DNA of 64,000 nucleotides from Macrostomum hystrix (Eukaryota > Animalia > Platyhelminthes). The stretch spans positions 558,001 to 622,000 of the forward strand of contig CATNEN010000010.1 in assembly GCA_950097015.1 (NCBI GenBank), in the 5' to 3' direction. Both the position numbers and the translations under genes were made by a program. A model generated the notes under the pieces. It saw only the letters and a list, made by a program, of their open reading frames with translations, ran no database searches and was not told where the DNA came from. Position 1 is the first letter of the stretch; every line of letters begins with the position of its first letter. This document shows positions 8,332 to 28,905 of this stretch, in pieces.

Positions 8332-9476
8332 GTGGGCTCAGATCAGCTTAGTAAAATGTATCAGATGCGATATCAGAACCTAATCCTATTCTATTTAGAT
8401 CTGAACACAGTTATACTCAACAAATTTGCGCTATTTATCACGTTTTCTAGATCTTTATTTTATATTTTAAGTACTTTTCACGATAAAATGACGTCTATGG
8501 TCTCACAAAACTTTTCAGGAGTTTTACGCTTGTGCAATGAAAAGCACAAATTTTTTCAAGTGCTTTGAGGCTATACATCTACACCGAAAAATAAAAACGT
8601 CCATAAGAATGTTATTACATTATATATATTCATCCCATGGTTTATGTAGCACTTTATTTATTACTGTAATAGTCTTTGTGTAGATTAAAATTATGGCTAG
8701 AGACTCGCAAAAGCTATATTGAGCTCTTGCGCACACGCGAAACAGACATGAGGGGCAGTTGGCTGTTGTCACAGCTGAGACACAGCGCCTGCTAGTCAAG
8801 CATGACAAAGCAGTCAGTCAGCGTCACAGTTCGCCCTTGGCCTCGGCGCTTCCGCTACGTAGGCTGTTGCAGGAGGACCAGGGCCAAAGGAACTTGGTCG
8901 CGCGGCCATGACTTTGCACACTGCAGGCAGTGCCGAGGCAGCATTCGGCGATGTACGTGCGATACAAATTGTTAATACATTTATAGTTGTCTGACTTAGG
9001 AATCCTGAACTGAATTATACGCTTGCAAATAGGATACAGGTGCAAAAAAAACTTTTTTCGGCATCGCGCCAGAATTTAGGAGCTCGGTGCGGTAGTCTGA
9101 ATCCTTCGTCGTCTCGGCGCCGCTGTGAAAGCGGGCAACACACGCACCTGTATTCACGCTGCGTAATCGCGCTCCTTAGTGGGCAGGCTGCTATATACTT
9201 TTATTATATAACATAGCTGTCGATTTTGAATCTCACGCCAGTCTCACATTGCTATTTATTAGTTAAATTAATGGTTTAATTGAAGTTCATTGAAGTTTTA
9301 AGTATATTTAAGTTTGAGAATTCCTGGAAAAAGTTAGAATTATTCCAAGTTACGTAAAAATATATATGGCACGATTATAATTGAGGAAAATATGTATAGT
9401 TTTTAAACGGTTATATTCAGGTTATGCAGCATTTCCGATTTTTGTGCAAATTTGTGCAGACTTTTCTTTAATGTGG

Positions 9477-9934
9477 TGTGACGTTGTCTCTCTAATTTAA
9501 TGTAATTTTAATATGCTACTTCTAATTAAGTGCATTATTTTCGTTAGCTATAATTGTTAGAGATATTTCTTTGGTTTTACATTAATATTTATAATGGTTT
9601 TGTTTTAGTGTACTACATAGTCGTAGTTCGTATTCAAATGTGCTAATTAGGCCTTTCCAGGAAGGCTCCCAACCCACACCCCCCGTGCCTGGTTCTGGTT
9701 CTACGACTGAGTGCTGGCTATTATTTAAGTGTGGCTAATTTCAACTGTAGCCGTAACTACTTTCAAGTGAATCTTGATTCATCTAACATATCTCTAAGTC
9801 ATATAGCCAGCATTCACCGTTAAGCGATCTCGTTATTTGAAGACCCAATTTACTGCCGAATAATAATTTACCTTACTGCTATTCAAATAGACCGAACCGC
9901 TACGCCTATACATTGGGACCGAAACTTCGTCATA
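9477..9934 (+). repeat. 5' LTR
   Basis: TGTGACG...CGTCATA; only one substitution seen by eye against 20546-21003 (gctacttc vs gctatttc). Confidence 0.97.
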
Positions 9935-9940
9935 TAAATT

Positions 9941-9954
9941 TGGAGGACCCACCG
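9941..9954 (+). promoter_or_regulatory. Primer-binding site
   Basis: TGGAGGACCCACCG 6 nt after the 5' LTR; TGG complements the tRNA CCA end. Cognate tRNA not assigned. Confidence 0.75.
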
Positions 9955-11037
9955 TCAATGACAATTCGAACTCGGTCATCGATCATCGTCATTCGTCAAA
10001 AAGCTAGCTCATGCTCATCATTAATTTGATCCCAAGTACCGTCTACTAAAGTCCAACAGTGATACAGTGATTCGGTTCACGGCACAGACTAGGCCTATTC
10101 AGTTCACGTGCACTATCGGTTCACGGCACAGCCTACCTACTACACAGTCGATCGAGAAAGTAAACAACAACTAACCTTATCAGCTTAAGCGTATCGGCAG
10201 TGTTTCTTCGCAGAGTGAGTCAGACGCTAAGCTTAAAGGAGGGTCAGACAACCAGCCAACCTCTGTGCTCTGCGCCTGTGTCCAATCACGTGACCACTAA
10301 ACACACCTGGTTAGGAGTATCAACTCTTAATTGCAAGCGCAACAACCCCAAAGCTTTAGCCCGCCGAGCGCCACCCCTCTCGTCTGTTGAACTGCGCCTA
10401 GCCATTGCAATCGATTGCCTAAGGGTTCTCTCGGCCTGCGCCCCGCTTGATTTTTGTGGACTAGGCGAGCCAGGCTAGCACTGCAAAGCATTTCCGCCGG
10501 GTCGTCACTTACAACATCAGCAATAGCAGTCAATTAGCCAAACGCCGGCAGCAGCGGCCCTACGCCAGCTGTTCACGACAACAGCTACTACGGCAGCCGG
10601 TGCCAGTCTGCAGTTGCAACAGCGGCCAACAACAATCGGTTAGCATCAGAGCATCGCCTCGCGGGTTGAACGGGCCTGCGACTGAAGGGCACCTGCCATC
10701 TGCGAACAAGCCAAAGCCAAGCTGAACCGAACCGAACCGAGCCGAGCGGTGTGCAGCAAGCCTGGTCGAGCCGAACCTTGCCGATTGCCGTGGCGAACTG
10801 AGCAGTGTGCCGAAGACAACGGCGGCCGAGATTCGGAACTGGTGGTTGCAGCTAAGGCTGAGTTCAATTATTTATTATTTTTATATTAGGATCTATTGTG
10901 GCAGTAACTTTAGACTTAGGACCACCATTAGTACTAGACTTGTTGCTCAATAATTTGTAAACTGCCACATTCTTTCTTGTGTAGGCCTAGCTCGTTCTTC
11001 GCTCCTCTTTTTCTAGTTGTGTGTCTGAGTTCTAGTC

Positions 11038-11511
11038 ATGTCAGGCGTAAATTCAGATACCGACCAAGTCAACCAGTCAGGGGCAGCATCGTCAGGCCAG
11101 GGACCAGAGGAGAGCATCGGTCATGGGCCTGGGACAGCAGGAGGTGCTGAGGTGGAGATGGAGGGAGGTGAGCAGCCGGAGCGCGAGACCTCCTTAGGTG
11201 ACCTCGCCAGAACCCTAGCCCAAATCCGTGACAACACCAGCACCAGTTCTAGAATACCGAAATCGAGCCCTCGGCTCAGACCCCCAGTGGCCTACACACC
11301 CAAAACCAAATTTGATATCTGGTGGACGCAATTCCGCCTGTTTCTTGAAGCCAATGAGATCATGCCTGAGCATCGGACAGCAGTGTTGCTTTCATCCCTG
11401 TCACCCGAGTGCCAAGAGTTCTTTTACAACTATCGTCTGCACGAGAAAAGCTTTGATGAAGCAGTGAAGAGTTTAAGAAGCCGGTATGGCGAGCCAACCC
11501 ACGTAGATAAA
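11038..11511 (+). CDS. Gag N-terminal 158 codons (cut by Helitron)
   Basis: ATG 11038; capsid-like PPVAYTPKTKFDIWWTQFRLFLEAN; ends GAT AAA at the Helitron junction and resumes in frame at 14118. Confidence 0.9.
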
Positions 11512-12070
11512 TCTATATATATAAAAGTGAAAACTCTGTCTGTCTGTCTGTCTGTCTGTGTGCAACCTTTTGTCTTTATAGACGCCGAAACCGCTCAACC
11601 AAATCGCACCAAACTTTGCACATACCTAAAACCACCTACGCTGAGTGCAATAGGCTACTCAAATTCCCGAAAAATCATTTCCTTCCTGCTCAAAAGTGCA
11701 AATAACTGCTCAAAAATCGTCAAAAAATCACTCAATTCGACATATCGTCGCCCCACTTTGTCAGATTTTCTCCAAATTTGATCCACTTACACTTTACATG
11801 TTTTCCAACAATGCTGTCAATTTTGAACATCTCTACTCAATCCAGAGCAAAGCTGCATCATCTCAAAGTGAGTCACTTTTTGTTTTCCGAGGACAGCCAC
11901 CCCAACTCCCCTCCGCCACTCTGCGGGCCAATTTTATTACAGCCACCCCCTCCCTTCCCCGGGCGCCGAAGCCCCAGACTGTACATTGTATTTCAAGCCG
12001 TGAATGTACACAGCCCAAACCCCTAGACTGTCTACTGGCCCCCAAGCAGCACTGAGACTGAGTGCGGTGA

Positions 12071-12772
12071 GTGCGGTGGCGTCCCAGTGCGCAGGGCTCT
12101 CCGGTCGATATTTCTCTCCAGCCAGCCTGGGATAGAAGAAAGAGAGAGGCTGGCGTTGACTGGCTGTCAGAGAGGGCAATTCTGCGTCCTAGAAATGATG
12201 CCGCCAACGAAATTAACTACCAACTGCTTCAGGAGTTGCCAGGTGCAGTTTTCACCTACAAGTCAATTGATACAACGTTGACTGATGACACCGCTGTGGA
12301 GTATCCTGTTGAGTTTCTGAACTCTCTAGATCCTCCTGGAACTCCATCGCACAACTTGCAGCTGAAAGTTGGGGCACCAATTATGCTCCTCCGCAACCTG
12401 AATGCGCCAAGGCTGTGTAACGGCACCAGACTGATAGTCAGGCGGCTCTTCCCACACGTGATTGAGGCCACGATAATGACTGGATCTGGCAGAGGAGAGT
12501 CTGTGTTCGTTCCCCGGATTCCAATTATCCCCACGGACCTGCCATTTCAGTTCAAGCGACTGCAGTTCCCTGTGAGAGTGTGCTTTGCGATGACTATTAA
12601 CAAGGCTCAGGGACAGTCGCTGAAGGTGGCTGGCATCAACCTGGAGACTCCTTGCTTCTCGCATGGGCAGCTTTATGTCGCCTGCTCCCGTGTTGGAACT
12701 CCAGCTGGCCTATTCATTTTCGCACCAAGGGGAAGAACGAAGAATGTGGTGTATCCCCAGGCCTTGAGGTGA
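12071..12772 (+). pseudogene. Helitron PIF1-like helicase, C-terminal fragment
   Basis: Motifs AILRPRN, LKVGAPIMLLRNL, RLCNGTRL, KRLQFPVRVCFAMTINKAQGQS, FSHGQLYVACSRV, TKNVVY; Rep domain and N-terminal helicase motifs absent. Confidence 0.93.
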
Positions 12773-12924
12773 CTCGCAAGCAATTAATAGAAAAGTAGTC
12801 ACGAATTGACCTTGACCTGTCTAACTCTAAACTCTGAAACAGTTTAATTTTGTTTCTTTGACATTGTTATTGTTATGCCATGGCTATTTTCCTTATGTAT
12901 ACGCGTGTACATGCATACTGTATA

Positions 12925-13184
12925 CAGAGGCAGATTTAGGGGGGGGTGGGCGGGGGGCAGTCGCCCCCCCCCCAAAATTTTAATCATGGGAATAAGATGC
13001 CCCCACCAGGGGCGCCAGTCGCAGCACTGGCGCCCCTTTTCGGCCGCTGGCGCCCCTTTTTCAGCCGCTGGCTCCCGTTTTTCAGCCGCTGGCGCCCTTT
13101 TTCGGCCGCTGGCACCCCCTCTGTGATTCTCATGGCGCTCCCCTGACAGACCGCCCCAAAACAAAATTCCTGGATCTGCCACTG
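12925..13184. mobile_element. hAT-type MITE, 260 bp, inside the Helitron
   Basis: TIRs CAGAGGCAGATTTAGG / reverse complement CAGTGGCAGATCCAGG; perfect 8-bp TSD ACTGTATA (12917-12924, 13185-13192); internal ~21-bp repeats. Confidence 0.9.
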
Positions 13185-13684
13185 ACTGTATAGAGGAGTG
13201 GCTAATAGACATGTTTCTAAAGAAGTAATCAAGAGGGGGCTGTTTGGACAAACTTTTCACTTATTTTTTACTTAAAACGCCCTTAAACAAACTCTTCACT
13301 TTTCATTAATGCAGTAAATAAATAAATGGTGACCTTCACTATAAAGTTATGTGGTGCCGGTGTCTCTGGCCTTGTGGTTTTGTTAGGCCTTCCTCACCCA
13401 ACGCCGTCTTGGCTGCCCGGTGCCCGGTGCCGCCATCTGATTGGCTGGGCGCGGGCCTTGTGTGCCTATCCTACCCCAGCCCTGCGTGGCTTTGCCCTCA
13501 CGCCAATCAGCTCTGCGTAGCTTTGCCCGTCCACCCGTCCAGCGCGTACAACCCAACCCCCCCAGCGCGCTGTAGGCTTTGTTTGTGCTCCGCCCATGTC
13601 TGCCCCCTTGTCAGCCCTTAAGGTATCGTTTTCTGCCCGGGCCAAGGCTACCTCTCTCTCCCCTTGCGAACTTTAAAAGATCGT

Positions 13685-13728
13685 GCCGTAAAGACGGTCT
13701 CTTACTGCGAAGGCTCAATTTATTGCAT
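13685..13728 (+). ncRNA. Flatworm spliced-leader exon-like sequence (non-canonical copy)
   Basis: GCCGTAAAGACGGTCTCTTACTGCGAAGGCTCAATTTATTGCAT: 5' stem CCGT/ACGG, TTACT and ATTT.TTGCAT as in flatworm SLs; near-identical to the Macrostomum SL as recalled. Lacks the terminal G of AUG and the adjacent GT donor. Confidence 0.75.
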
Positions 13729-14117
13729 AGCGAAGTGATTATTGAATAGTGATTCCGAGTGCATGGTTTATTAAAGTGCAAAAATTGCCGACAAATACAT
13801 TCAGCGTCATCCTGCCATCCTATCGTGCGTCCCGACCGGTAAGCACTGTATTTGTGTCTGTCCTTTCGGGGTGCCAGGTCCGCACGGAGTACTGTAATAA
13901 TCTTAGAAGTACTGTGTGAGCGTCCTAACGCCACCAGTCCCTGACTGCAACAGAGCGTCCTAACGCCTGGTTCAGTGATCGATAATATTTTACTTAATAG
14001 GGCTGTCGGCCGGGGATCTCAAACCGACCACTGTCACTACAGTTAATACAGAGACGTGAATTGCTTACTGCTTTGCTTTAAATTTCTGCCCCAAAAACAA
14101 CGGGCAAAAAAAGCTAG

Positions 14118-17100
14118 TACTATATAGAACTGACCTCAGCCCAACAGCTGTCATCGGAGAGTATCCAGGAGTATTTTGACCGCCTCATAGGCCTAGCAAA
14201 TGCCGCGGACATGAGCCGCTCTGAGTACGAGCCCCTAGTAAGGACGCGGTTTTGCTATGGCTTGGCTGACAAAACTATTGCCGAAAAACTTATCAATATG
14301 CTGCATGAAGCACCCAGGGCTTCACTGGAGAGACTCCTAGCTAGGGCTCGAGACACAGATCAAACTAGGCAGCTGCTCAAACTGACTGAGCAACCCAAGG
14401 TTAGAAGTGTTGAAGCAGACGAGATCCGAGCCCTGAAGGCGAGAATAGCAGAACTGGAGAAGAAACAGTCAGGGCCACAACAAAGCACACAGAAACCTAC
14501 TAATAGCAACAGTGGTGGCCATAGGCACAACTTTCATTCTCAGAAGTCCCCCCAGGACTACTCTAGTCATGCCCGAATGAGCGGCGCCCTACCTAAATGC
14601 TTCAGGTGTAGTGAGACTGGCCACCTCATTGCCGAATGCCCCTATCCTAGAGAGCCAGGTACTGGTGCGCCACCCTCGAAGTTCAGGACCCCGCAACCCT
14701 TTAGGGAACCAAAAAGTTTTAAGCCAAATGCGAGTTCGAGGCCACCCAGAGAGAAGGGGGTAGTGACTCATTGGAAAGACTCTTACGGGTTCATACAGTC
14801 CTCTCAGATAGGCGACTCTGTTTTTGCGCACCTGTCTCAGTTGGTCCAGCCCCTGTTGGACCTGGCCTTAAGCCACCAGCTAGTGGGTACCAGCGTGACA
14901 TTCAGCCGTGTCGCCGACGCTGGCAAGTCTAGAGACAAAGCTATTAGTGTGACAGCTACGTCGACGGACCCTAAGTGTGCTGAAGTGTCTTCAGACCTAC
15001 CCAGTTACAAGGCAGGATTCTATGTTCAGGTTGAGATTGGCGAGACCAAGACTGTTGCCCTTCTAGATCCCGGTGCCAATGCCTCTCTGATTTGCCCGAA
15101 GATGCGAGACAAGCTCCTAGAAGCTGATCCAATCAATAATGTCTTCACCCCTGCGCGCACCCAGCGCACAGCTACTGGTTTCAATGGGGCTAGTTCGCAA
15201 ATACTAGGCAAGCTCCAGTGCGAAGTGAGTTTAGGCAAATTAAAACAGCAGCACATATTCTTAGTGATTGAAGGCCAGTTATCCGAGATCCTGCTAGGGT
15301 TGGACTTCTGTGGTAATTTCCAAATCGTCATGGACATGGCCTGTGACCGTGTGACCTGCGCTGGAGAGTACGTCCCAATTTTTCGCGGCACCAATGCGAT
15401 CTGTAGCGTGAATCGCGTTGTGGCCGCTTGCGATACAGTCCTGCCACCCCGCTCAGAAACGCTGATCCCAGCTAGGGCTATAGACGCTGAGAGCAGTTCC
15501 TATGGCGTTGTTAGTGCCAGATTATTCGACCCCGACCCGTCTATCATAGTCGCCAATTCATTGGACCAGGTCAGCCCCACTAGTCACGTGTTAGTCAGAG
15601 TCCTAAACAGCGGCGAAGATGAGGTGAGGATTGCCAAGGGCGAGGAGGTAGCGTCTTTCAAGAAGCTAGGAGCTGATGAGAGCGTAGTGAGTACCAGACT
15701 TAGTGAGAGTGATTTCAGCATTGACAACGAGAGCGCGCTTAATGATAAGCTGTGCAAGCTGCCCTACCCAGATCCAGGGACAACCAAGTGGCTCTTAGAC
15801 CAATTTCACCTGCAGGAGCGTAACCTGACCCAGGAGCAGCTGGATACGACAGTAAAAATGCTGAACTATTTTCTTAGCCAGATCTCGAAATCGGAAGCAG
15901 GCATCGGTAGAACCCCTCTGCATGAACTGTCAATCGAGTTAAAGGACCCGAAGTGTCGCCCGATTTCTCAGCCATCGAGGCGAACAACCCCAGCGCAAAA
16001 GGAATTTCTGGATAAGTACATCGCCCAGCTCCTAAACCAGGGAGTTGTTGAAGAGTGCGACTCCGAGTGGGCCTCACCCATTGTGCTTGTGAAAAAGAAG
16101 GACGGTACATGGCGCCTTTGCGTAGATTACCGTGCGCTTAACAAGCACATAAAGCCGTGCTCTTTCCCGCTGCCCTTGATAGACGAATCTTTCGATAGCT
16201 TAGCGGGATCCGCCGTCTTTAGTAGTTTAGATCTGACGAGCGCCTACTGGCAGGTAGGGATCCGGGAAGCTGACCGAGACCTCACCGCGTTCTCATGTCC
16301 CCAGGGCACCTTTCGTTGGACCGTAGTCCCCTATGGGATCAAGACCGCGCCTGCAAGTTTCGCCAGGCTGATGCACCGCGTGTTTCGCCCTCTTTTGCTC
16401 AGGGTTAGCCTAATTTACCTAGACGATGTCATCATCAAGGCCAGAAACAACGACGAGATGATTTCCCATCTGGCGCTAGTTTTCTGGCAGCTTAGAAAAG
16501 CGAATCTGAAAATCAGACCCTCGAAGTGTGAGCTCTTCAAGGACAAACTGAAGTTTCTGGGATTCATAGTCTCCTCAAAAGGGATAGAGGCCGATCCGAC
16601 CAAAACTGAGGCCGTTCAACAGTGGTGTACACCTAGGGATAAGAAGCAGCTTCTCTCCTTCCTGGGATTTGCCAATTACTACAGAAAGTTTGTCCCTAGG
16701 TTCTCCATCATAGCCACGCCTCTGTATGCCCTAGCCAAGAGCTCTGAGAAATTTGTTTGGCGCCAAGTGCACGAGGCCGCTTTCCAAGAACTAAAGTCCA
16801 GCCTATGTAATCCACCAGTGCTGAGATACCCAGACCTGAGTCCCACAGCGGGCACCTTTGTTCTAGACTGCGACAGCTCCCTTGACGGTGTGGGAGCAGT
16901 CCTTTCCCAACTAGATGGGAACGACGTAGAACAAGTGATTGCCTACGCTTCTAAAAAATTCACCAGCGCGCAGCGAAACTATTGCGCCACCTTGAGGGAG
17001 CTCCTAGGTCTGGTTCTTATGTTAGAGCAGTTCAGAACTTACTTACTTGACCGGGAGTTCCTAGTGCGAACAGATGCGATTGCTCTGAAGTGGTTACACT

Positions 17101-19853
17101 CAAAAAAACACGCAACCGGAATGCTCGCCCAATGGTTGGTCACACTAGAGCCTTACACCTTCAAGGTAGACCAGACTCCACTGGAGAGAATAGCGGAGTA
17201 CGATTTTAAAATCTCCCACAGAGCCGGGGAATCCCACGTTAATGCGGATGTTTTGAGTCGCAACCCGAAGTTCAGAGCAGACCATTTCGACTGCCCAACC
17301 TGTAGCCTGATCCCAGAATTTATATCCAAGTTCCAGAAGGGAAAAAAACCAGCGCCATCGGATGTTAGTGAGGTCAAAATCAGCCGTATGTGTGTCAGTA
17401 CTCAGACTCTAGTCACAACTGGCTGTCAGACCACCGAGCTGATATTCGACTCAGCGATTCAGCTTCAAAATGAGCCGGTTACAGACTTAGCAGTTCAGAC
17501 TGACCTCCAACGGGTCCCTGAGATCCCTGAGCCTAATCAAGCTAGCAAGCGCCCAGTCATCCCAACCTCGTCTGCAGGTACTCAGGTAGACACCAAACCT
17601 AAACCGGAAACACCGCCATCAGCCGCAGCACATGCTGTGCAAGTCCAGGTCTCGGATAGGTCCACGATCGCAGACGAAGTTCTAGACCCAGGCAGTGATA
17701 ACGAAGATGAGGCGGGGGCTGAACAGAGAGAAAGAGAATGGGCCCGTAGTGCTCAGGATTCAAACATTGATCTTGTTTTCCTGAGAGATGCTGTAGCTGG
17801 AAAGGTAGAGAGGTTGTCTAAGCAGGAGCTCCAAGGTTGCAGTCGTGAGCTCAGAGCCTTATGGGCTATGTTTGACGAACTGTCTGTTGAGGACGATCTG
17901 CTGCTTCGGAACAAGCCAGCCAAGAAAAGGAAGCCCGCTGCCAAGCTTACGGTCATCCCTGAGTCTGCGAATGTAGATGAGCTAGTGACCAACTACCACA
18001 GAGCCGTTAATCACTCGGGGATAAACAAGACTTTAGGAGTGGTAAAAAAGAACTTTCAAATCTCGAACCTAGAAACTATAGTCAAGGGAGTCGTAGCTAG
18101 CTGTGAGATTTGCGCTAGGACTAAGAAATGCAAGCGAAAGAACAAAGCTCCGATGCAGCCAACCCTAGCCGGGTACCCGAACCAGGTCGTGCATGTAGAC
18201 CATTGCGGACCGTTCCCTGAACAGGAAGGCTACCGGTATCTGCTTGTAATGATTGACAGATTCACCGGATTTGTGGAAATTGTCCCTGTGAAAGACGTAA
18301 CTGCCGAGACAACCGCGGCAGCAATCCTGACAGAGTGGATTGTTCGCTACGGTGCTATGGAGCAAATGGTCTCGGACAATGGCACAGCATTCATAAATAA
18401 CATTGTTGCAGAGCTGACCCGCTTGCTAGAGATCGATACCGTTAGAATCACTGCTCGCCGCCCCCAGGCCAACGGGAAGGTGGAACGCAACATCCAGACT
18501 ATTAAGAGTCAAATTCGAGCAGTCTGTGCTGAGAGGCATGTGACTTGGCCCTTTGCCGCTAGGTGTGTAGGAATGAGCATCCGCTCTCTAGAATCCGAAT
18601 CGACAGGCATGACACCTGCTAAGCTTTTTCTGGGCCGTGAATTTCAAATGCCCCTAGACCTGATGTACAACCCACCAAGGCAAGATTGCTATGACCCGGA
18701 CAGTTACGCGCACCGACTCCACCGAACTCTTGTCGAAACCTCTGCCACCGCACGGGCTGTTAGGAAGAAGGCACAGGCTAGGCAGAAGCGTTACTATGAC
18801 AGATCGGTTTATAAGTCAAGCTACGAGGTTGGAGAGCTAGTGTGGGTTCTAAACCCCGACCACAAAGGCCTCGACCCAGCTGTTTGGTTTGGTCCGTACA
18901 AGGTTATTCAGAAGGTCTCTGAGAGAAACTATAGGTTGATTCCAGAGTTTTCGCGAGAGAATCCGTTCAGAGTACCGAATCCTAGTCACAACATCTATAA
19001 CGTAGACCGGATGAAGAGGTGCATCCGCCAGCCAAACTATCAGGATGTGGTTGATAGATTTAGATTAGACACCGTAGCAAGGATGCCACGCTCATCTAAG
19101 CTAGGACAAGGAGATCTGGATTCCAGCTCCAGACAGCTGAGCTTTAGTTCTGACTCGACTTCCGAACCAGACTTGGTCACTGTCCCACCTGCGGGTCAGA
19201 AGAGCCGCTCTTTTCCGAGAAGCCAATCGTCATCAATCACACAGCCAGTCGAACAGCCAATCACACAGCCAGTTCAACAGCCAATCACACAGCCAGTTCA
19301 ACAGCCAATCACACAGACAGTTCAACAGCCAATCACACAGCCAGTCGAACAGCCAATCACACAGCCAGTTCAACAGCCAATCACACAGCCAGTTCAACAG
19401 CCAATCACACAGACAGTTCAACAGCCAATCACACAGCCAGTTCAACAGCCAATCACACAGCCAGTTCAACAGCCAATCACACAGACAGTTCAACAGCCAA
19501 TCAAAACACTGCCAGTGGAACAGCCAAATGCTCAACCAGTCACTAAACCAGAGTCACCACCCGAGGTGCAACCTGAACAAGCACCACAAGCAGTAAACAT
19601 TGTCAATAATGAACAGGTGCCAGACATCGGTGCTGAAGTTGAAGTCACAGCAGAGCCAAATCCAGATCCTCAGGCAACAGCAATACCAAATCTGCCACCA
19701 GAACCACAACCACAAATAGAACACGAACACGATCAGACAGACCAGGCACAGAGACCAGCTTGCACTGTTACGAGGTCCGGCCGGCAAGTAAGGCCGCCGG
19801 TCAGATTCCTTTCCACGCTGGTCAATCTGTTCAGGAGAGGTAGCGAGAGCTAA
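14118..19853 (+). CDS. Gag C-terminus + Pol, single open frame (CCHC knuckle, cold-shock domain, protease, dUTPase-like, RT, RNase H, integrase)
   Basis: Knuckle CFRCSETGHLIAEC 14598-14639; CSD ~14748-14957; LLDPGA 15060-15077; YLDD 16416; RNase H DCDSS / RELLG / TDA; integrase HHCC, VDHCGP, SDNG, NGKVE; GPY motif; terminal TRSGR. No stop in 1911 codons. Confidence 0.96.
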   Translation, partial: YYIELTSAQQLSSESIQEYFDRLIGLANAADMSRSEYEPLVRTRFCYGLADKTIAEKLINMLHEAPRASLERLLARARDTDQTRQLLKLTEQPKVRSVEADEIRALKARIAELEKKQSGPQQSTQKPTNSNSGGHRHNFHSQKSPQDYSSHARMSGALPKCFRCSETGHLIAECPYPREPGTGAPPSKFRTPQPFREPKSFKPNASSRPPREKGVVTHWKDSYGFIQSSQIGDSVFAHLSQLVQPLLDLALSHQLVGTSVTFSRVADAGKSRDKAISVTATSTDPKCAEVSSDLPSYKAGFYVQVEIGETKTVALLDPGANASLICPKMRDKLLEADPINNVFTPARTQRTATGFNGASSQILGKLQCEVSLGKLKQQHIFLVIEGQLSEILLGLDFCGNFQIVMDMACDRVTCAGEYVPIFRGTNAICSVNRVVAACDTVLPPRSETLIPARAIDAESSSYGVVSARLFDPDPSIIVANSLDQVSPTSHVLVRVLNSGEDEVRIAKGEEVASFKKLGADESVVSTRLSESDFSIDNESALNDKLCKLPYPDPGTTKWLLDQFHLQERNLTQEQLDTTVKMLNYFLSQISKSEAGIGRTPLHELSIELKDPKCRPISQPSRRTTPAQKEFLDKYIAQLLNQGVVEECDSEWASPIVLVKKKDGTWRLCVDYRALNKHIKPCSFPLPLIDESFDSLAGSAVFSSLDLTSAYWQVGIREADRDLTAFSCPQGTFRWTVVPYGIKTAPASFARLMHRVFRPLLLRVSLIYLDDVIIKARNNDEMISHLALVFWQLRKANLKIRPSKCELFKDKLKFLGFIVSSKGIEADPTKTEAVQQWCTPRDKKQLLSFLGFANYYRKFVPRFSIIATPLYALAKSSEKFVWRQVHEAAFQELKSSLCNPPVLRYPDLSPTAGTFVLDCDSSLDGVGAVLSQLDGNDVEQVIAYASKKFTSAQRNYCATLRELLGLVLMLEQFRTYLLDREFLVRTDAIALKWLHSKKHATGMLAQWLVTLEPYTFKVDQTPLERIAEYDFKISHRAGESHVNADVLSRNPKFRADHFDCPTCSLIPEFISKFQKGKKPAPSDVSEVKISRMCVSTQTLVTTGCQTTELIFDSAIQLQNEPVTDLAVQTDLQRVPEIPEPNQASKRPVIPTSSAGTQVDTKPKPETPPSAAAHAVQVQVSDRSTIADEVLDPGSDNEDEAGAEQREREWARSAQDSNIDLVFLRDAVAGKVERLSKQELQGCSRELRALWAMFDELSVEDDLLLRNKPAKKRKPAAKLTVIPESANVDELVTNYHRAVNHSGINKTLGVVKKNFQISNLETIVKGVVASCEICARTKKCKRKNKAPMQPTLAGYPNQVVHVDHCGPFPEQEGYRYLLVMIDRFTGFVEIVPVKDVTAETTAAAILTEWIVRYGAMEQMVSDNGTAFINNIVAELTRLLEIDTVRITARRPQANGKVERNIQTIKSQIRAVCAERHVTWPFAARCVGMSIRSLESESTGMTPAKLFLGREFQMPLDLMYNPPRQDCYDPDSYAHRLHRTLVETSATARAVRKKAQARQKRYYDRSVYKSSYEVGELVWVLNPDHKGLDPAVWFGPYKVIQKVSERNYRLIPEFSRENPFRVPNPSHNIYNVDRMKRCIRQPNYQDVVDRFRLDTVARMPRSSKLGQGDLDSSSRQLSFSSDSTSEPDLVTVPPAGQKSRSFPRSQSSSITQPVEQPITQPVQQPITQPVQQPITQTVQQPITQPVEQPITQPVQQPITQPVQQPITQTVQQPITQPVQQPITQPVQQPITQTVQQPIKTLPVEQPNAQPVTKPESPPEVQPEQAPQAVNIVNNEQVPDIGAEVEVTAEPNPDPQATAIPNLPPEPQPQIEHEHDQTDQAQRPACTVTRSGRQVRPPVRFLSTLVNLFRRGSES
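19235..19503 (+). repeat. Coding 24-bp tandem repeat, 11 units (ITQPVQQP), in integrase tail
   Basis: Unit ATCACACAGCCAGTTCAACAGCCA with a recurring pattern of variants. Confidence 0.93.
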
Positions 19854-20530: not shown

Positions 20531-20545
20531 TGAGAGGGAGGCGAG
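20531..20545 (+). promoter_or_regulatory. Polypurine tract
   Basis: TGAGAGGGAGGCGAG immediately before the 3' LTR. Confidence 0.85.
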
Positions 20546-21003
20546 TGTGACGTTGTCTCTCTAATTTAATGTAATTTTAATATGCTATTTCTAATTAAGT
20601 GCATTATTTTCGTTAGCTATAATTGTTAGAGATATTTCTTTGGTTTTACATTAATATTTATAATGGTTTTGTTTTAGTGTACTACATAGTCGTAGTTCGT
20701 ATTCAAATGTGCTAATTAGGCCTTTCCAGGAAGGCTCCCAACCCACACCCCCCGTGCCTGGTTCTGGTTCTACGACTGAGTGCTGGCTATTATTTAAGTG
20801 TGGCTAATTTCAACTGTAGCCGTAACTACTTTCAAGTGAATCTTGATTCATCTAACATATCTCTAAGTCATATAGCCAGCATTCACCGTTAAGCGATCTC
20901 GTTATTTGAAGACCCAATTTACTGCCGAATAATAATTTACCTTACTGCTATTCAAATAGACCGAACCGCTACGCCTATACATTGGGACCGAAACTTCGTC
21001 ATA
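20546..21003 (+). repeat. 3' LTR
   Basis: 458-bp direct repeat of 9477-9934. Confidence 0.97.
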
Positions 21004-21475
21004 GTGGTGGCAGTTGTTTTGTCTGCCGCCAGTTTGTCTGCTCAGCAGACAAAATTTAAAATCAGTTTATCTGCCATCCAATAGTGGGTGAATTGGTGTT
21101 GGAGCAAAAAGCTAGTGATGAAAATGAAACCAGCTCCTCTGCCAACCAAAGTCCAAAATAGCATTCATAATTCCAGTGAATTTATGTTTAATTTGTTAAC
21201 TTGATTTGATCAACACCAAAACTTCTGACAACCTGGCACAACATATATATATTAGGCAGTTCCAAAGATCTTAAAAAACAATGATTGATAGGCCCCCCTT
21301 TTGCTGGTATCGTATCATTGATTAATTGTATATTGTATCATACATATCATTGCTGGTTGTATTTTGAATAATGATATATATCAAATGGACTTCCTGCCCA
21401 GGATAGACTATGTATGTCTAGACCAAACAATAAAATATCACTGACCAATTCAATGTCACAATTTCATTGTAGATA

Positions 21476-23677: not shown

Positions 23678-25104
23678 ATGTCATCAAGCAGTGCTGAACT
23701 CAACATGTTGCTGGAGATGGGATTCACTGAGACCCGAGCGTAAGTTATGCTTCATCAGGATTGCAAACATAACTGTCATTCATGCTGGAGTAGAAACTCG
23801 AATAGAAGCCTGTAACTAGCTAAACTATACATTTTTCTTTTTAGAAAAAAAGCCTTAATGCAGTCTGGCCACCGTGGGATTGAAGCTGCAATGGACTGGT
23901 AAGTGAGGACCAACACCAATTATTGGCTGATGCCGTTTGCTGCAGTTCAAGTCAATTGTGAATTTCCATGCCATGTTTGCCTTGTTTTCGTGTCATTTCA
24001 AAAAAACTGACGTCACTTGCAGGCTGTCAAGCCACCAGGAGGACCCCGATATTGACGATCCGATTGTTGAAGCGGAGCCAACAGCAGCAGTAAGCGAGTC
24101 TGCGACTGCCGCTGCCGCTGTAGATCAGACGCAGTCGGATGAACCTTCAGATGCCGATGCGAAATCGCTCAAGTGCGACGACTGCGGCCGGCTGTTCCGC
24201 AGCCCGGCTGAGGCCGAGTTCCACGCGGCCAAGAGCGGCCACGCGAACTTCTCACAGTCCACCGAGGAGGTGAGTACCCTCTCTTCGATATTCGCTCACT
24301 AGTAGTTCAGAGATGACTAATTGGGTGTTAGAGATTGTAGCTGATTGTTGGTTACCGGCTGCAGCTGATTGGTGCAGTTGAGGCAGGCTGTTGCTGATTG
24401 GTGCAGTTGAGGCAGGCTGTTGCTGATTGGTGCAGTTGAGGCAGGCTGCAGCTGATTGGTGGGTTTCGCTCTCACCTTCTCAGGTGCGCGCCTTAACAGC
24501 CGAAGAGAAGGCGGAGCAGCTTCGACAGCTGGAGGCCAAGCTGGAGGCCAAGCGACAGGAGCGGGAGGCCGAGGAGCGGCTCGCGGAGCTTGAGCGGGAG
24601 CGGAAACGGCGCACAGACGGCAAGGGCCTGACGAAGTGGCGCGAGGAGGCATCCGAGCTGGAGCTGAAGCGCGAGGCGGAGGCGCGCCGGCGCGAGAAGG
24701 AGGAGCAGCGCGAGTACCTGGCGCGCATTCGCCAGCGCTACGCCCAGGATCGCGCCGACCTCGAGGCCCGCGAAGCCGAGGAGAAGCGCGCCGCAGTGGC
24801 GCCTGCCGCGCCCAGCCTGCCGAAGGCGCCTGCCACCGCCGCCTCCGAGAGCGACACGTGCCGTCTCCAGATCCGTCTGCCCGGCGGCGGCCAGCCGCTC
24901 ACCGCCCAGTTCAGCGCCAAGGAGAGCCTCGCCTCCGTCGCCTGCTACGTTCGAACGCATCGAGCAGATGGTAGAGCCGATGAAGACTTCGCCCTGATGA
25001 CGCTGTTCCCTAAGCGGGTGTTCACCGCCGATGACATGGAGAAGCCACTGTACACCCTGGACCTCTGCCCGTCTGCCGCGCTCATGGTCACCAAGCCGTC
25101 CTGA
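23678..25104 (+). CDS. UBXN1: UBX domain protein 1 (UBA - C2H2 - coiled coil - UBX)
   Basis: Exons 23678-23739, 23845-23898, 24023-24269, 24484-25104, GT-AG, in frame. UBA (LLEMGF..RA.KAL..SG..GIEAAMDWL), CDDCGRLF..AEFHAAKSGH.NFS.STEE, UBX (CRLQIRLP, FALMTLFPKRVF, LDLCPSAAL). Confidence 0.92.
24355..24462. repeat. 29-bp minisatellite, ~3.5 copies, UBXN1 intron 3
   Basis: Unit GCTGATTGGTGCAGTTGAGGCAGGCTGTT. Confidence 0.85.
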
Positions 25105-25906
25105 GCAGCCTCCAGCAGCTTGACCTCAGTTCCGCTGGTGGATGAGAGTTTGTTGGGTTAGTGGGGCCAGTCTGTAGTGTGAATTTCAAGTAAAGTCACA
25201 TCTAGGCCTCGCTACTGTGCCTAATTTAATTGCATCCGTTGCGCAATCGACTGAAAAATCTGAAGCAAACACTATTCAGTTTCTGCTCTTTTTGTTTACT
25301 TTAAAAAAAATATGTTCAATAGTTTGCTTGTATCTCTGACTTCACAAATATATCGATTCCGGTTTGCTAAGCTAAGTAAGCAGCCAGCACCGCTCCTCAA
25401 TGTTTTGTTTTCTATCTTTCTCACTGTGTTCGCCTCTTGCAGTTATTTCTTCCGTATTTATCTCAAGTTGATCGCCCAGTTTTTAAGTCGGTTAATGCAT
25501 AAGGAAAACTTATTCGGCAAAAAATCTTTTTCGAAGACGAATCATGAACTATTTTTAGCTCGAGTTTCTTAAGCAATTTCGCATTAGTCAAAGCTGTGCG
25601 TGTGCTCCCGTAGTTTCGGGGACTTGCTTTTTCAAGCCATTGCGACAGTCGCTCTGACTGATAAAGATTGGAGACAAGAGGGAGCGGCCTGCGCGTCACT
25701 TCGCCCCCTCCCCCGCCGCGGGCCCCCTGGGCGATAAAGCGGCGGGCCGGGCCCAAGGAAGCGGCAAGCGGCCTGGGTGCTCGCGACCCGCAACAGCAGA
25801 TCTGGGAATGCCCACCCGCCAGGCCTGCCGCTTCCCAGCTAGCCTGCGTGCATTTATTTGGCACAGTGAGCTTTGAGCTGCTTGTGACATGCACTGAGCA
25901 CGCGAA

Positions 25907-26626
25907 ATGTCCGACTTGCAGCAGCAGCCGCAGCACCCAGGGAACCAGTCCGAGGCGGAGCAGCGCCAGCCGCCGTCGGCGATGGCGGCCGCGGCTGAAG
26001 CCGAGCAGTTCAGCTGTCCGGACTGTCCGCGCCGCTTCCCGGAGCTGCGCCAGCTGTCCCGACACCGGCGCAGTCACGCCAGGCCGCACCGCTGCGGCGA
26101 CTGCGGCCGCGCCTTCGTCCAACGGAGCCACCTCAGCAGCCACATGCGAGTGCACAGCGGCGAGCGGCCGTTTAGCTGCGAGCAATGTCCCAGCAGCTTC
26201 GCCCGCCTCAGCAATCTGCGCAGCCACCTGCGCGCTCGGCACACCGACGAGAGGCCTTTCGCCTGCGATGAGTGCGGCCGGCAGTTTCCTAGAAACACGG
26301 ACCTGTCGCGGCATCTGCGCACCCACTCCGGCGAGCGACCCTTCGCCTGTGCCCAATGCGGCCGCAGCTTTGCCCAGAGCGGCTCCCTGCTGAGCCATCG
26401 CCGGCTTCACGCTGACGAGCGGCCATTCCAGTGCGACCTGTGCCAGCACCGCTTCGCTCGGCGAAGCCACCTGGACAGTCACCGGAGGGCGCACGAAGAT
26501 GCGGCTGCCGTGGCTGCCGGCCGGCGACTCGACTGCGTTCTCTGTCCGCGCGGCTTTCAACGGCCTGGCGACCTGGTGCGGCACCTGCGGGCACATGCGC
26601 GCCGCCTGGCCATGACAATGGCGTGA
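25907..26626 (+). CDS. Intronless C2H2 zinc-finger protein, 7 fingers, 239 aa
   Basis: Seven C-x2-C-x12-H-x3/4-H units with SGERPF/TDERPF linkers. Confidence 0.9.
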   Translation: MSDLQQQPQHPGNQSEAEQRQPPSAMAAAAEAEQFSCPDCPRRFPELRQLSRHRRSHARPHRCGDCGRAFVQRSHLSSHMRVHSGERPFSCEQCPSSFARLSNLRSHLRARHTDERPFACDECGRQFPRNTDLSRHLRTHSGERPFACAQCGRSFAQSGSLLSHRRLHADERPFQCDLCQHRFARRSHLDSHRRAHEDAAAVAAGRRLDCVLCPRGFQRPGDLVRHLRAHARRLAMTMA

Positions 26627-28217
26627 ACCCGGCCCGAGTCTCTTCCGAATGCCCTCCTTCTTGAGCTCAAGCTTGACCGAGATCATGGGCTGCAGTCCCT
26701 CATTCCCTGGCTCACCCCCTCAATGGATCTGAAGCATAGATCTCCTCTCTAAGACAGGGGATTAGTCCAACAATGGTTCAGAGTGTATCAAAGATGTTAG
26801 GCCATTTTAAAAAATTCTGAAAAGCACCTGTAAGTTACGCTGTTCCGCGCCAAATTTTGCTGTAAATTGCTGTCGTGCTCTCCAATTGACAAGTTTACCG
26901 AGAAGTACATGCCGTATTTTCATGAATTATTGCTTCCATATTTAGCCCCGTCTCGTAACATTCGCTCTTAGAGCAAGGTTTAGACTATTTTAACTTTACA
27001 CACTGCTGCAGATTACTTTATTGTCTTCCATCGGTCTAGTTTTTATGCTATTTTATGAATTTTACCACCTAAATCAAGCCCAATTGTTTGCTGACGCTGT
27101 AGAGTTACATTTAATGTCTACTAGAAGCATGGACACATGCAGATTCGATTTTATCTGTGCTCTATGAAATATACGATGGGACATTGTTCATATTTCATGG
27201 ACAGAGTGACTTGGATTTTCTAACAGAGGAGTTAATCGTGATTTTTTCAATAACATTTTAACATAAAAACATACAGATTTGCGTTTGAGTTTTTTTCTAC
27301 TTATTTATTGACTTTTTCCCTGGGCTTTGCCCGTGTTGCTACTCAATAGTAGTAATAGTAGGTGGTTTAGGACGTCCACCGAATTCCCTTATTGCCCGAA
27401 AACCCAAGGTCACTATGTGCATGCCCCCCACGCGCACGTTGATCGTAGCGGTGGCACGTTGAGAAAACGTTGAGACAACATAAATACAGTCTCGCCCTAC
27501 TTAGAGGGCTCACCTTTTCTTCGCACCACACACAGCGTGACTCTTGAGTCATTACAGTACCCAGGTTACAAACAGGAGCAAATGAAAGAAGACTGAGAAA
27601 GTTGCCGTCAACACGCTAGTTTTGCTACATTAAATATTATGACAGCCTTGGTAGTTTTACGTAAGATTGTACATTCAAAACTAAGTCCGTTGCAAATATG
27701 CCGTATGTTTGGTTCTGATTTCCTTGTTTGGTTTAGTTTTTTGTTTGGTAGTGCCATATGGTAGTACAGTATATACTTTAGTTTCTTTTGTTTGCTTCAT
27801 TTAATACCTGTAACACACCATACTGCAATCTGTGCGACGGATACTGCACAGAATTCGTAAAAATGTTCATTTAAATACACATTTTGACTCCTAAAATATT
27901 TGCCTGAAAGTTCCTACGAGCGTATTGAGCTACGTGCATATTTTAATAAAGCATATGCCATAGACTTTTAATATCATTGACATATAACCAAGTGTGCGTA
28001 AACGTCTCAAGCTCGTGTATAGTTTATGGCCCAAAGACCATCAAAGAAATAGATTGAAGTGTGCAGTAAATTCCGCAACTGTGCGGTAAATGATACTCCA
28101 CTTGATCTCCGTGCCATCCCTCTTCTGAGCTACTATGCAGTAAATCCCAGACGGGTATTGTCTATGGGCCGAAGGAGCTGGTCTTGCGCACACACACTTG
28201 GTCATAAATCAATGCAC

Positions 28218-28313: not shown

Positions 28314-28905
28314 ATCTACCATTTAGCCAGCCTTCTGAAAAATTTGCACAAAACGCGATTGCAACGTCCTGTGTTGTTTAGTAGTCCTTGCTAGTTACAT
28401 ATACTACTGACGAAGTCCTGTGACTCTGTCTAAAACACTCACTGTGAGTCGTTGACGATACCAATTGAAATTTTGCTAGAAAAGCAAAGAAAAAAATGCG
28501 TATACGTCTTATAGTTGTGCCTGCAAGGCCCCAATTTTTTAAGATTCTTTTTTTTTGGCTTCTGTACGTTTCTATCAAAATGACGTCTGCTCTCATGTCG
28601 TCATTCCCAGCATATTATTGTACATGTAAGTTGCATACATGTCTGAGATAAGCAAATCGGCATGTTTTACTGTACATTTACCAGATAGAGTACTAACGCA
28701 TTAGAAATTGAACTTAGGATTAGATTTCTATATACCAGGTATTGAGTTTTTATTGATTACCAAAGCTCTTTTTCATTTTTGCTTTTTCTGATATCATCAT
28801 GATGCTATTTTTAGCCCCTGCGTAATTTTTATTTGTCTATTTAAAATAGTTTCTCACAAAAATAAGTCCAATATGTTTCAATACTTTTTTACACTTCACT
28901 GGAAA

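What the first reader, a model, noticed from the sequence alone, without database searches (positions are those of the whole stretch)
14598..14957. LTR retrotransposon Gag carrying a cold-shock domain beside its zinc knuckle
Seen: between the CCHC knuckle and the protease lies REKGVVTHWKDSYGFIQSSQIGDSVFAHLSQL...LVGTSVTFSRVADAGKSRDKAISVT. By eye this aligns over its length with CspA-type domains (G.V.W, RNP1 YGFI, RNP2 VF.H.S, G..V.F, A..VT). Established: CSDs are single-stranded nucleic-acid chaperones; CSD + CCHC is the Lin28 / plant CSP pairing, there with the CSD first; standard Gypsy Gag has no CSD. Inference: a captured host or bacterial CSD acts as an extra nucleocapsid module (primer annealing, strand transfer, packaging) or binds host small-RNA precursors. 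It is in frame in a young, otherwise intact element, so it is probably a family trait. This is the best candidate for an undescribed system here; novelty unverified.
Basis: partly seen in the sequence, partly recalled or inferred. Interest (0 to 1): 0.88.

Follow-up and report, generated by a model that had tools for sequence, protein, structure and literature searches.

The report
Flatworm retrotransposon Gag with cold-shock domain
A Ty3/gypsy jumping gene of a Macrostomum-type flatworm carries a real cold-shock RNA-binding domain, of the host Unr/CSDE1 type, between its Gag zinc knuckle and its protease; related elements in Macrostomum lignano keep the same domain, and I found no published description of it.

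Summary
Residues 180-250 of the 1880-aa gag-pol ORF (window 14748-14960) are a cold-shock domain (CSD). Cut out alone, the segment scores 29.9-30.0 bits against Pfam CSD, where the cut-off is 27. A structure model built on an alignment has pLDDT 91 and shows a five-strand barrel. Its best structural match is the first CSD of human UNR (TM-score 0.81). The RNA-stacking residues W188, Y192, F194, F205 and H207 are present.

The domain is a family trait. Two other lineages, both Macrostomum lignano gypsy polyproteins 37-57% identical to this one, have the same knuckle-CSD-protease order. The CSD block aligns without gaps at 41-51% identity, while the flanking linkers have decayed to 8-38%. The five element CSDs group together in a tree. 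A profile built from four of them ranks Unr/CSDE1 domains above Y-box, Lin28 and bacterial cold-shock proteins.

The nearest gypsy relative outside Macrostomum has no CSD.

One correction: the copy is young (LTRs differ at 1 of 459 positions) but not intact. A 2,606-bp Helitron-like insertion splits gag at 11511/11512.

The function is inferred, not shown. Most likely the CSD is a second single-strand nucleic-acid chaperone or packaging module working with the single knuckle. It is a new variant of a known kind.

The parts
9473..9476 (+). Target-site duplication GTGG, 5' copy (3' copy at 21004-21007)
   Evidence: Read from the sequence.
9477..9934 (+). 5' LTR, 458 bp, starting TGTGACG
   Evidence: blastn against 20545-21003: 458/459 identical, no gaps; repeat family D12.
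9941..9954 (+). Candidate primer-binding site (TGG-initiated 14-mer, 6 nt after the LTR); inferred only
   Evidence: Read from the sequence. No tRNA gene lies in the window to match it against.
11038..11511 (+). gag, N-terminal piece (158 codons), cut at its 3' end by the insertion
   Evidence: 48% identical to residues 71-147 of the M. lignano sibling polyprotein P0151, E=4e-22; weak DUF1759 match.
11512..14117 (+). Helitron-like insertion (2,606 bp) that interrupts gag. It starts TC and ends CTAG, sits between an A and a T, and carries a helicase remnant at 12071-12772
   Evidence: Junctions read. Pif1_2B domain at 69 bits. Weak hairpin just before the CTAG. The gag pieces on either side abut on the sibling protein.
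14118..14597 (+). gag resumes in the same frame (capsid C-terminal part and coiled-coil/linker). The long ORF's first Met is at 14211
   Evidence: Translation. 53% identical to P0151 from residue 155 onward; full alignment.
14598..14639 (+). Single CCHC zinc knuckle (C130-X2-C-X4-H-X4-C143)
   Evidence: Pfam zf-CCHC, 19.7-22.8 bits depending on context, cut-off 20.8. The Cys and His residues are invariant in all lineages.
14640..14747 (+). Basic, proline-rich linker between the knuckle and the CSD
   Evidence: Translation. Poorly conserved, with indels: 8-38% identity.
14748..14960 (+). Cold-shock domain (aa 180-250), with W188, RNP1-like Y192-G-F194-I and RNP2-like V-F205-A-H207
   Evidence: Pfam CSD 29.9-30.0 bits when scanned alone. 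Model pLDDT 91.3. Best fold match human UNR CSD1, TM 0.81. Ungapped, 41-51% identical across three lineages.
15024..15308 (+). Aspartic protease
   Evidence: Pfam Asp_protease_2 and gag-asp_proteas, aa 272-366.
16089..17156 (+). Reverse transcriptase and RNase H
   Evidence: Pfam RVT_1 aa 627-787 (124.5 bits); RT_RNaseH and RT_RNaseH_2 aa 850-982.
17970..18464 (+). Integrase (H2C2 zinc domain and catalytic core)
   Evidence: Pfam Integrase_H2C2 aa 1254-1306 and rve aa 1323-1418.
20532..20545 (+). Polypurine tract immediately upstream of the 3' LTR
   Evidence: Read from the sequence.
20546..21003 (+). 3' LTR
   Evidence: blastn.

Best explanation
The window holds an 11.5-kb Ty3/gypsy (Metaviridae-type) LTR retrotransposon in the genome of a close relative of the flatworm Macrostomum lignano. 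Its single gag-pol ORF encodes, in order: capsid, one CCHC knuckle, a basic proline-rich linker, a cold-shock domain, protease, RT, RNase H and integrase. SHOWN: the CSD is a genuine five-strand OB barrel with the four aromatic/His base-stacking positions intact. It sits at the same place in three lineages of this element clade that are only 37-57% identical. It is conserved about as well as the protease, while its flanks have decayed. The five element CSDs form one group in a tree. They are closest to Unr/CSDE1-type eukaryotic CSDs, with the first CSD of Unr the best match. INFERRED: an ancestor of this clade captured one CSD once from a cellular Unr/CSDE1-like mRNA, probably by template switching during reverse transcription. 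The domain is kept because it works with the lone knuckle as a second single-strand RNA/DNA-binding module of the nucleocapsid region. Likely roles are selecting or coating the genomic RNA and melting structure during primer annealing and strand transfers. It may be released with the knuckle as one NC-CSD product, in the way betaretroviruses make an NC-dUTPase fusion. This copy is recently inserted but disabled by a later Helitron-like insertion in gag.
For: Domain: Pfam CSD 29.9-30.0 bits against a cut-off of 27 for the isolated segment. All four element CSDs match, best E=3.8e-9. Fold: pLDDT 91.3, strands at residues 4-13, 16-21, 27-31, 52-58 and 67-73 of the model. Foldseek top matches are 1wfq (human UNR CSD1, TM 0.81) and 4qqb_X (fly Unr CSD1). 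Family trait: an exhaustive phmmer search of 1.84 billion representatives found P0006 (1760 aa) and P0010 (1336 aa), each matching knuckle plus CSD in one stretch. Both show CCHC-CSD-protease in Pfam and both are M. lignano proteins. Overall identity to the window protein is 55% for P0151 and 37-57% for P0010. Constraint: the CSD block is ungapped at 41-51% identity, against 8-38% and 15-22% with indels in the linkers and 45-62% in the protease. W188, G193, F194, F205 and H207 are invariant. Nonsynonymous differences per site are 0.43 in the CSD, 0.52 and 0.65 in the linkers and 0.32 in the protease. Single origin: the element CSDs form one group with support 94/92. Donor type: a profile of the element CSDs ranks seven UNR/CSDE1 chains first (E 4.7e-6 to 2.8e-3). 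Y-box and bacterial Csp chains come at E>=0.05. Lineage-specific: the nearest non-Macrostomum gypsy relative (P0175) goes from knuckle to protease with no CSD. Element anatomy. Precedent for an accessory domain fused to NC: the M-PMV NC-dUTPase fusion (PMC1802613). Host CSD proteins (YBX1, CSDA) associate with retroelement RNPs (PMC3753637).
Against: No binding, chaperone or processing data exist, so the function is inferred from fold and position only. The Pfam score drops below the cut-off (22.3-25.9 bits) when the domain is scored inside longer sequence. The structure model was built on an alignment of CSDs, so it is not independent of the sequence call. The single-sequence model failed (pLDDT 45). 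No close cellular donor was found: the best single cellular domain scores about 27 bits. The sister group in the tree is unresolved. Only one genus is represented, so 'family trait' rests on three lineages. Formal dN/dS cannot be computed because synonymous sites are saturated.
Confidence: 0.6

Rival explanations
1. Unr mimicry for translation or RNA-fate control. The CSD binds the element's own long leader (about 1.1 kb between the 5' LTR and the gag ATG) or its poly(A)-proximal region. There it does what host Unr/CSDE1 does for some cellular and viral RNAs: promoting cap-independent translation, stabilising the RNA, or switching it from translation to packaging. On this reading it is not a reverse-transcription chaperone.
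For: The domain is closest to Unr/CSDE1, and best to its first CSD. The leader runs from 9935 to 11037, which is unusually long. From established knowledge, not tested here: Unr is a trans-acting factor for picornavirus IRES elements and partners with PABP.
Against: The element has only one CSD, whereas Unr works through five to nine, and no CSDE1-specific or SUZ-C parts are present. The position directly after the knuckle and before the protease is nucleocapsid territory. No leader motif or structure was tested.
Confidence: 0.2
2. Counter-defence or host-RNA decoy. The CSD binds host small-RNA precursors or other host RNAs, in the manner of Lin28, to blunt silencing of the element.
For: The CSD plus CCHC pairing is what Lin28 uses on pre-let-7 (established knowledge). 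Lin28 structures appear among the fold matches, at ranks 48-50.
Against: The domain order is reversed and there is one knuckle rather than two. Lin28 is absent from the profile hits up to E=1. There is no evidence of any host target.
Confidence: 0.07
3. Passenger. The captured domain now serves only as a folded spacer between nucleocapsid and protease, with no nucleic-acid role.
For: It evolves faster than the protease and RT (41-51% identity against 45-62% and 82%). The donor is no longer recognisable.
Against: All four base-stacking residues are invariant across lineages that are 37-57% identical. The block has no indels, while both flanks are riddled with them. A mere spacer would not keep the RNP1 and RNP2 motifs.
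Confidence: 0.1
4. Not a real feature: a chance CSD-like match, or a chimeric assembly or gene model.
For: The Pfam score is below the cut-off when the domain is scored in the full-length protein (22.3 bits).
Against: The ORF is continuous in the window. The same architecture occurs in independent M. lignano contigs. All four copies match Pfam CSD, and the fold model is confident.
Confidence: 0.02

Closest known systems
Unr / CSDE1 cold-shock domains (especially CSD1; PDB 1wfq, 4qqb chain X)
   Same: Best match by sequence and by fold: 33% identity, TM 0.81. They share the pattern R-E-x-G-[VI]-[VI] ... S-Y-G-F-I-Q ... F-x-H-x-S-Q.
   Different: Unr has five to nine CSDs plus CSDE1-type non-canonical domains and a SUZ-C motif. 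The element has a single CSD embedded in a Gag-Pol polyprotein, with a longer loop between strands 3 and 4.
Lin28 and plant cold-shock proteins (e.g. AtGRP2/CSP2): CSD combined with CCHC knuckles
   Same: The same two RNA-binding modules sit in one polypeptide. Plant CSP2 (8tg0) is the first non-Unr hit of the element profile, at E=4.4e-3.
   Different: The order is reversed here: knuckle first, then the CSD. There is one knuckle instead of two to seven. These are cellular proteins, not part of a mobile element. Lin28 is absent from the profile hits up to E=1 and ranks 48-50 in the fold search.
Ty3 and retroviral nucleocapsid proteins (CCHC-based nucleic-acid chaperones)
   Same: One CCHC knuckle flanked by basic residues, at the C-terminal end of Gag and upstream of the protease, as in Ty3 (PMC3258130 listed).
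   Different: No described nucleocapsid carries an OB or cold-shock fold. A structure search of predicted viral proteins (BFVD) returned only giant-virus and phage Csp-like proteins, and no retroelement Gag.
Betaretroviral NC-dUTPase fusion (Mason-Pfizer monkey virus)
   Same: A captured cellular domain sits between the nucleocapsid and the protease and is expressed fused to NC (PMC1802613).
   Different: That domain is an enzyme (dUTPase), not an RNA-binding domain, and it is reached by frameshifting. Here everything lies in one ORF.
LINE-1 ORF1p and other non-LTR ORF1 proteins with an RRM
   Same: A cellular-type RNA-binding fold recruited into a retroelement's Gag-like chaperone protein (established knowledge).
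   Different: A different fold (RRM, not CSD) in a different element class.
Macrostomum lignano Ty3/Mdg4 LTR retrotransposons (PMC12801592)
   Same: The sibling lineages P0006/P0151 and P0010 come from that genome. The L001 copy has LTRs identical over at least 300 nt.
   Different: That survey classifies elements by RT and does not mention a cold-shock domain. The window's host gene is only 79% identical to its M. lignano counterpart, so this is most likely another species.

Membership tests
Cold-shock domain (Pfam PF00313) | Profile score at or above the curated cut-off (27 bits) | tested here: met
   29.9-30.0 bits for the isolated 76-77-aa segment, and all four element CSDs match. Caveat: 22.3-25.9 bits when scored inside longer sequence.
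Cold-shock domain (Pfam PF00313) | RNP1-like and RNP2-like motifs with the aromatic/His stacking residues | tested here: met
   W188, Y192-G-F194-I and V-F205-A-H207 are present. W, G, F, F and H are invariant in all three lineages.
Cold-shock domain (Pfam PF00313) | Five-stranded antiparallel beta-barrel (OB fold) | tested here: met
   Predicted only: pLDDT 91.3 with five strands; TM 0.70-0.81 to solved CSDs.
Cold-shock domain (Pfam PF00313) | Binds single-stranded RNA/DNA | not testable with these tools
   Needs biochemistry.
Ty3/gypsy (Metaviridae-type) LTR retrotransposon | Paired LTRs with a target-site duplication and a polypurine tract | tested here: met
   458-bp LTRs, 458/459 identical. 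GTGG lies on both flanks, and a purine run precedes the 3' LTR.
Ty3/gypsy (Metaviridae-type) LTR retrotransposon | Domain order Gag(CCHC)-PR-RT-RNase H-IN | tested here: met
   Pfam order. The same order is seen in the sibling P0006.
Ty3/gypsy (Metaviridae-type) LTR retrotransposon | Placement in a named clade (Mag, CsRN1, Gmr1/Osvaldo, Mdg3...) by RT phylogeny | not tested
   No GyDB reference sequences were on hand. The canonical CCHC motif and the PR-RT-RH-IN order argue against CsRN1 and Gmr1 proper, from memory only.
Unr / CSDE1 protein family | Multiple tandem CSDs with CSDE1-type intervening domains and a SUZ-C motif | tested here: not met
   One CSD only, with no PF23456 or SUZ-C hit. 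Cellular hits such as P0005 have them. The element's CSD is Unr-like in sequence, but the protein is not a family member.
Lin28 family | N-terminal CSD followed by two CCHC knuckles | tested here: not met
   There is a single knuckle, and it precedes the CSD. Lin28 ranks low.
Helitron (the insertion in gag) | 5' TC, 3' CTRR, insertion between A and T with no duplication, 3' hairpin, Rep/helicase coding remnant | tested here: met
   TC at 11512 and CTAG at 14114-14117, with flanking A and T. Pif1_2B remnant. The hairpin is only weakly supported (z=-1.8), and no Rep domain was found.

The most novel reading that the evidence does not exclude
A clade of animal LTR retrotransposons has built a host Unr/CSDE1-type cold-shock domain into its nucleocapsid region as a working, selected part of the replication machinery. 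That would be a Gag architecture not described before. It would also be a natural experiment in which a retroelement encodes for itself a kind of host RNA chaperone that other retroelements recruit from the cell.
Probability: 0.55. Interest if true: 0.72.

Novelty: new variant of a known kind. Interest (0 to 1): 0.62.

Why it matters
Gag nucleocapsid regions are thought to rely on zinc knuckles and basic tails. This element adds a folded OB-type RNA-binding domain and keeps it under constraint, which widens the known range of retroelement nucleic-acid chaperones. It gives a clean case of host-domain capture into Gag that can be dated within one flatworm genus. It also sets up a direct test: what does a cold-shock domain add to a single knuckle in RNA selection, annealing and strand transfer? 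Macrostomum lignano is a transgenic model with active, heat-inducible LTR elements (PMC12801592), so the question is experimentally approachable. The convergence with Lin28 and the plant CSPs (CSD plus CCHC) suggests that this pairing is a generally useful RNA-remodelling unit.

Tried and rejected
- The single-sequence AlphaFold model of knuckle plus CSD was useless (pLDDT 45). It was replaced by the alignment-based model.
- A word-indexed search of the polyprotein limited to residues 120-262 found nothing. That blank reflects the tool's word requirement: the exhaustive search did find relatives.
- The alignment-seeded search recovered only the P0006 cluster, plus ordinary gypsy polyproteins that have no CSD among their precomputed domains. 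That list is not conclusive, since P0006's own list also omits the CSD. I checked two of these proteins directly, and neither has a CSD.
- No contig is on record for P0010, so no DNA was available for the third lineage.
- The window's exact 1880-aa protein is not in the collection.
- Donor hunt: the best single cellular CSD scores only about 27 bits (a Plasmodiophora-type multi-CSD protein). Named cluster members were protists or unnamed metagenome proteins, none a flatworm. The tree leaves the sister group unresolved. A bacterial origin is rejected, because bacterial Csps rank below all Unr domains.
- dN/dS between the window and L001: synonymous sites are saturated (pS about 0.8), so no ratio can be given. 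Only the ranking of nonsynonymous divergence is usable.
- Other long hits with knuckles (P0073, P0081, P0019, P0121, P0133) are SPT5, SPT6, DEAD-box or ARID proteins with CCHC arrays, not retroelements. P0139 is a knuckle-protease fragment without a CSD.
- The supplementary tables of the M. lignano LTR paper are not held.
- The tools printed consensus lines automatically. I did not use them.
Full report
1. What is at the coordinates

It lies inside a single 1880-aa ORF, 14211-19853. Pfam finds the following in that ORF, in order:
- a CCHC knuckle at aa 129-144;
- a cold-shock domain (PF00313) at aa 182-249, covering profile positions 2-65 of 66;
- an aspartic protease at aa 272-366;
- RVT_1 at aa 627-787;
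- RNase H at aa 850-982;
- integrase zinc and core domains at aa 1254-1418.

The CSD scores 29.9-30.0 bits (E about 5e-7) when the 76-77-aa segment is scanned alone, above the curated cut-off of 27. Inside longer sequence it scores only 22.3-25.9 bits. A phmmer search of the PDB with the segment returns only UNR/CSDE1 cold-shock domains.

2. Fold

A single-sequence model failed (pLDDT 45). I then aligned the segment with the element's relatives and the best-matching cellular CSDs (A2, 53 rows). The model built on that alignment has pLDDT 91.3 and pTM 0.80. It shows five strands plus a short helix in the long loop between strands 3 and 4.

Foldseek against the PDB puts the first CSD of human UNR on top (1wfq, TM 0.81, rmsd 1.9, 33% identity). 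Next come Drosophila Unr CSD1 (4qqb_X), CspA, YB-1, CRHSP-24 and, much lower, Lin28. The model depends on an alignment of CSDs, so it corroborates the sequence call but is not independent of it.

The residues that stack on bases in solved CSD-RNA complexes are all present: W188, Y192/F194 (RNP1-like YGFI) and F205/H207 (RNP2-like VFAH).

3. The element

LTRs of 458 bp lie at 9477-9934 and 20546-21003 and differ at one position in 459. Each is flanked by GTGG, and a purine run precedes the 3' LTR. A TGG-initiated candidate primer-binding site sits at 9941-9954; this is inferred only. gag starts at 11038, after a leader of about 1.1 kb.

The copy is not intact. At 11511/11512 gag is cut by a 2,606-bp insertion that begins TC, ends CTAG, sits between an A and a T, and carries a Pif1-type helicase remnant. 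These are the marks of a Helitron. gag resumes in the same frame at 14118. The N-terminal piece matches residues 71-147 of the M. lignano sibling P0151, and the resumed piece matches from residue 155. So the insertion appears to have removed little or nothing of gag.

The 1880-aa ORF therefore begins at an internal Met.

4. Is it a family trait?

An exhaustive phmmer search of 1.84 billion cluster representatives, using knuckle plus CSD as the query, gave 258 hits at E<=0.001. Two of them match in one continuous stretch that spans both modules: P0006 (1760 aa) and P0010 (1336 aa). The rest are multi-CSD Unr-like proteins and CCHC-array proteins.

P0006 has zf-CCHC 340-356, CSD 391-451, protease, RT, RNase H and integrase. 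P0010 has zf-CCHC 410-427, CSD 456-522 (29.2 bits) and protease, but its model lacks the RT. Both are Macrostomum lignano proteins. P0006's 90% cluster has seven members from different contigs, none named for a CSD. The P0006 locus has LTRs identical over at least 300 nt, 8,287 bp apart.

The window protein is 55% identical to P0151 overall, and 37-57% identical to P0010 in the aligned blocks. Identity by region:

| Region | Identity across the lineages compared | Indels |
|---|---|---|
| CSD (71 residues) | 41-51% | none |
| Linker before the CSD | 8-38% | yes |
| Linker after the CSD | 15-22% | yes |
| Protease | 45-62% | none |
| RT (window vs P0151 only) | 82% | none |

Invariant CSD positions include W, G-F-I-Q-S, F-x-H, G-T-x-V-x-F and A. 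Between the window and L001, synonymous sites are saturated. Nonsynonymous differences per site rank protease 0.32 < CSD 0.43 < linkers 0.52 and 0.65.

The nearest gypsy relative outside this group that the searches returned, P0175, goes from knuckle (943-959) to protease (from 1028) with no CSD.

5. Host and origin

The window is eukaryotic. It carries WDR90/POC16 exons, a UBX-domain gene and clathrin heavy-chain exons. The UBX ORF is 79% identical to its M. lignano counterpart, and the next hits are at 38%. The window therefore most likely comes from a congener or close relative of M. lignano, not from the Mlig_3_7 assembly. It is not human.

In a maximum-likelihood tree of 53 CSDs, the five element domains form one group (support 94/92). 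They sit inside the half of the tree that contains the CSDE1-type proteins, but the sister group is unresolved.

A profile of four element CSDs ranks seven UNR/CSDE1 chains first (E 4.7e-6 to 2.8e-3). Plant CSP2 follows at 4.4e-3. Bacterial Csps and Y-box proteins come at E>=0.05. The best single cellular domain scores only about 27 bits, so the donor gene cannot be named. A bacterial source is not supported.

6. How it most likely works

Shown: fold, motifs, position, conservation and single grouping. Inferred: one capture of a CSD from an Unr/CSDE1-like transcript in an ancestor of this clade, then retention as a second single-strand nucleic-acid-binding module beside the lone knuckle and its basic linker.

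The position, just after the knuckle and just before the protease, is where betaretroviruses carry a captured dUTPase, which is made as an NC-dUTPase fusion (PMC1802613). Cellular CSD proteins such as YBX1 and CSDA travel with retroelement RNPs (PMC3753637). Encoding such a module in cis is a plausible gain.

Rivals:
- Unr-like control of translation or RNA fate through the long leader.
- A Lin28-like decoy for host small RNAs.
- A mere spacer, which is disfavoured by the invariant stacking residues.
- An artefact, which is excluded.

7. Novelty

Full-text searches for cold-shock domain together with retrotransposon/Gag, Ty3/nucleocapsid or LTR retrotransposon/polyprotein found no description. 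The 2025 survey of M. lignano LTR elements and the DARTS paper never mention a CSD. A structure search of predicted viral proteins found no retroelement Gag with this fold.

Repbase, Dfam and GyDB could not be searched. The sibling proteins are already in public databases under generic names. I rate this as a new variant of a known kind: an ordinary Ty3/gypsy element with an undescribed Gag accessory domain.

8. Verdict

Interest is 0.62.

Noticed in passing
window 11512-14117: Helitron-like insertion (TC...CTAG, A^T site) inside gag of the young LTR element. It carries a Pif1_2B helicase remnant (12071-12772) and a 21-nt tandem repeat (13027-13118). Because the LTRs differ at only one position, the Helitron-type element must have been active even more recently.
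   Followed up: partly
window 19234-19527: A 24-nt tandem repeat, about 12 copies, 93% matches, lies in frame in the C-terminal tail after the integrase. It encodes repeated QPITQPVQ-like octapeptides. The tail is the least conserved part of the polyprotein (27-32% identity).
   Followed up: no
window 9935-11037: Unusually long leader (about 1.1 kb) between the 5' LTR and the gag start codon. It was not examined for structure or upstream ORFs.
   Followed up: no
window 37679-47501 and 58404-60359: Many long minisatellite arrays (periods 17-31 nt, 12-28 copies each) surround clathrin heavy-chain exons on the minus strand (42272-43111, 46848-48059). Several mechanical ORFs simply read through these arrays.
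   Followed up: partly
window 614-4193 (minus strand): GC-rich (about 60%) exons of a WDR90/POC16-like gene (CFA20 domain plus beta-propellers), a cilium/centriole protein.
   Followed up: partly
window 24427-25104: UBX-domain gene exon, 79% identical to the M. lignano protein P0202. This was used to infer that the window comes from a relative of M. lignano and not from the Mlig_3_7 assembly.
   Followed up: yes
window 25463-26686 (minus strand) and 28873-30330 (plus strand): ATG-initiated ORFs of 407 and 485 aa with no Pfam match at E<=0.01.
   Followed up: no
L001 13791-15674: A 176-bp satellite array, at least 10 copies, 99-100% identical, begins within a few hundred bases downstream of the 3' LTR match of the M. 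lignano sibling element.
   Followed up: no
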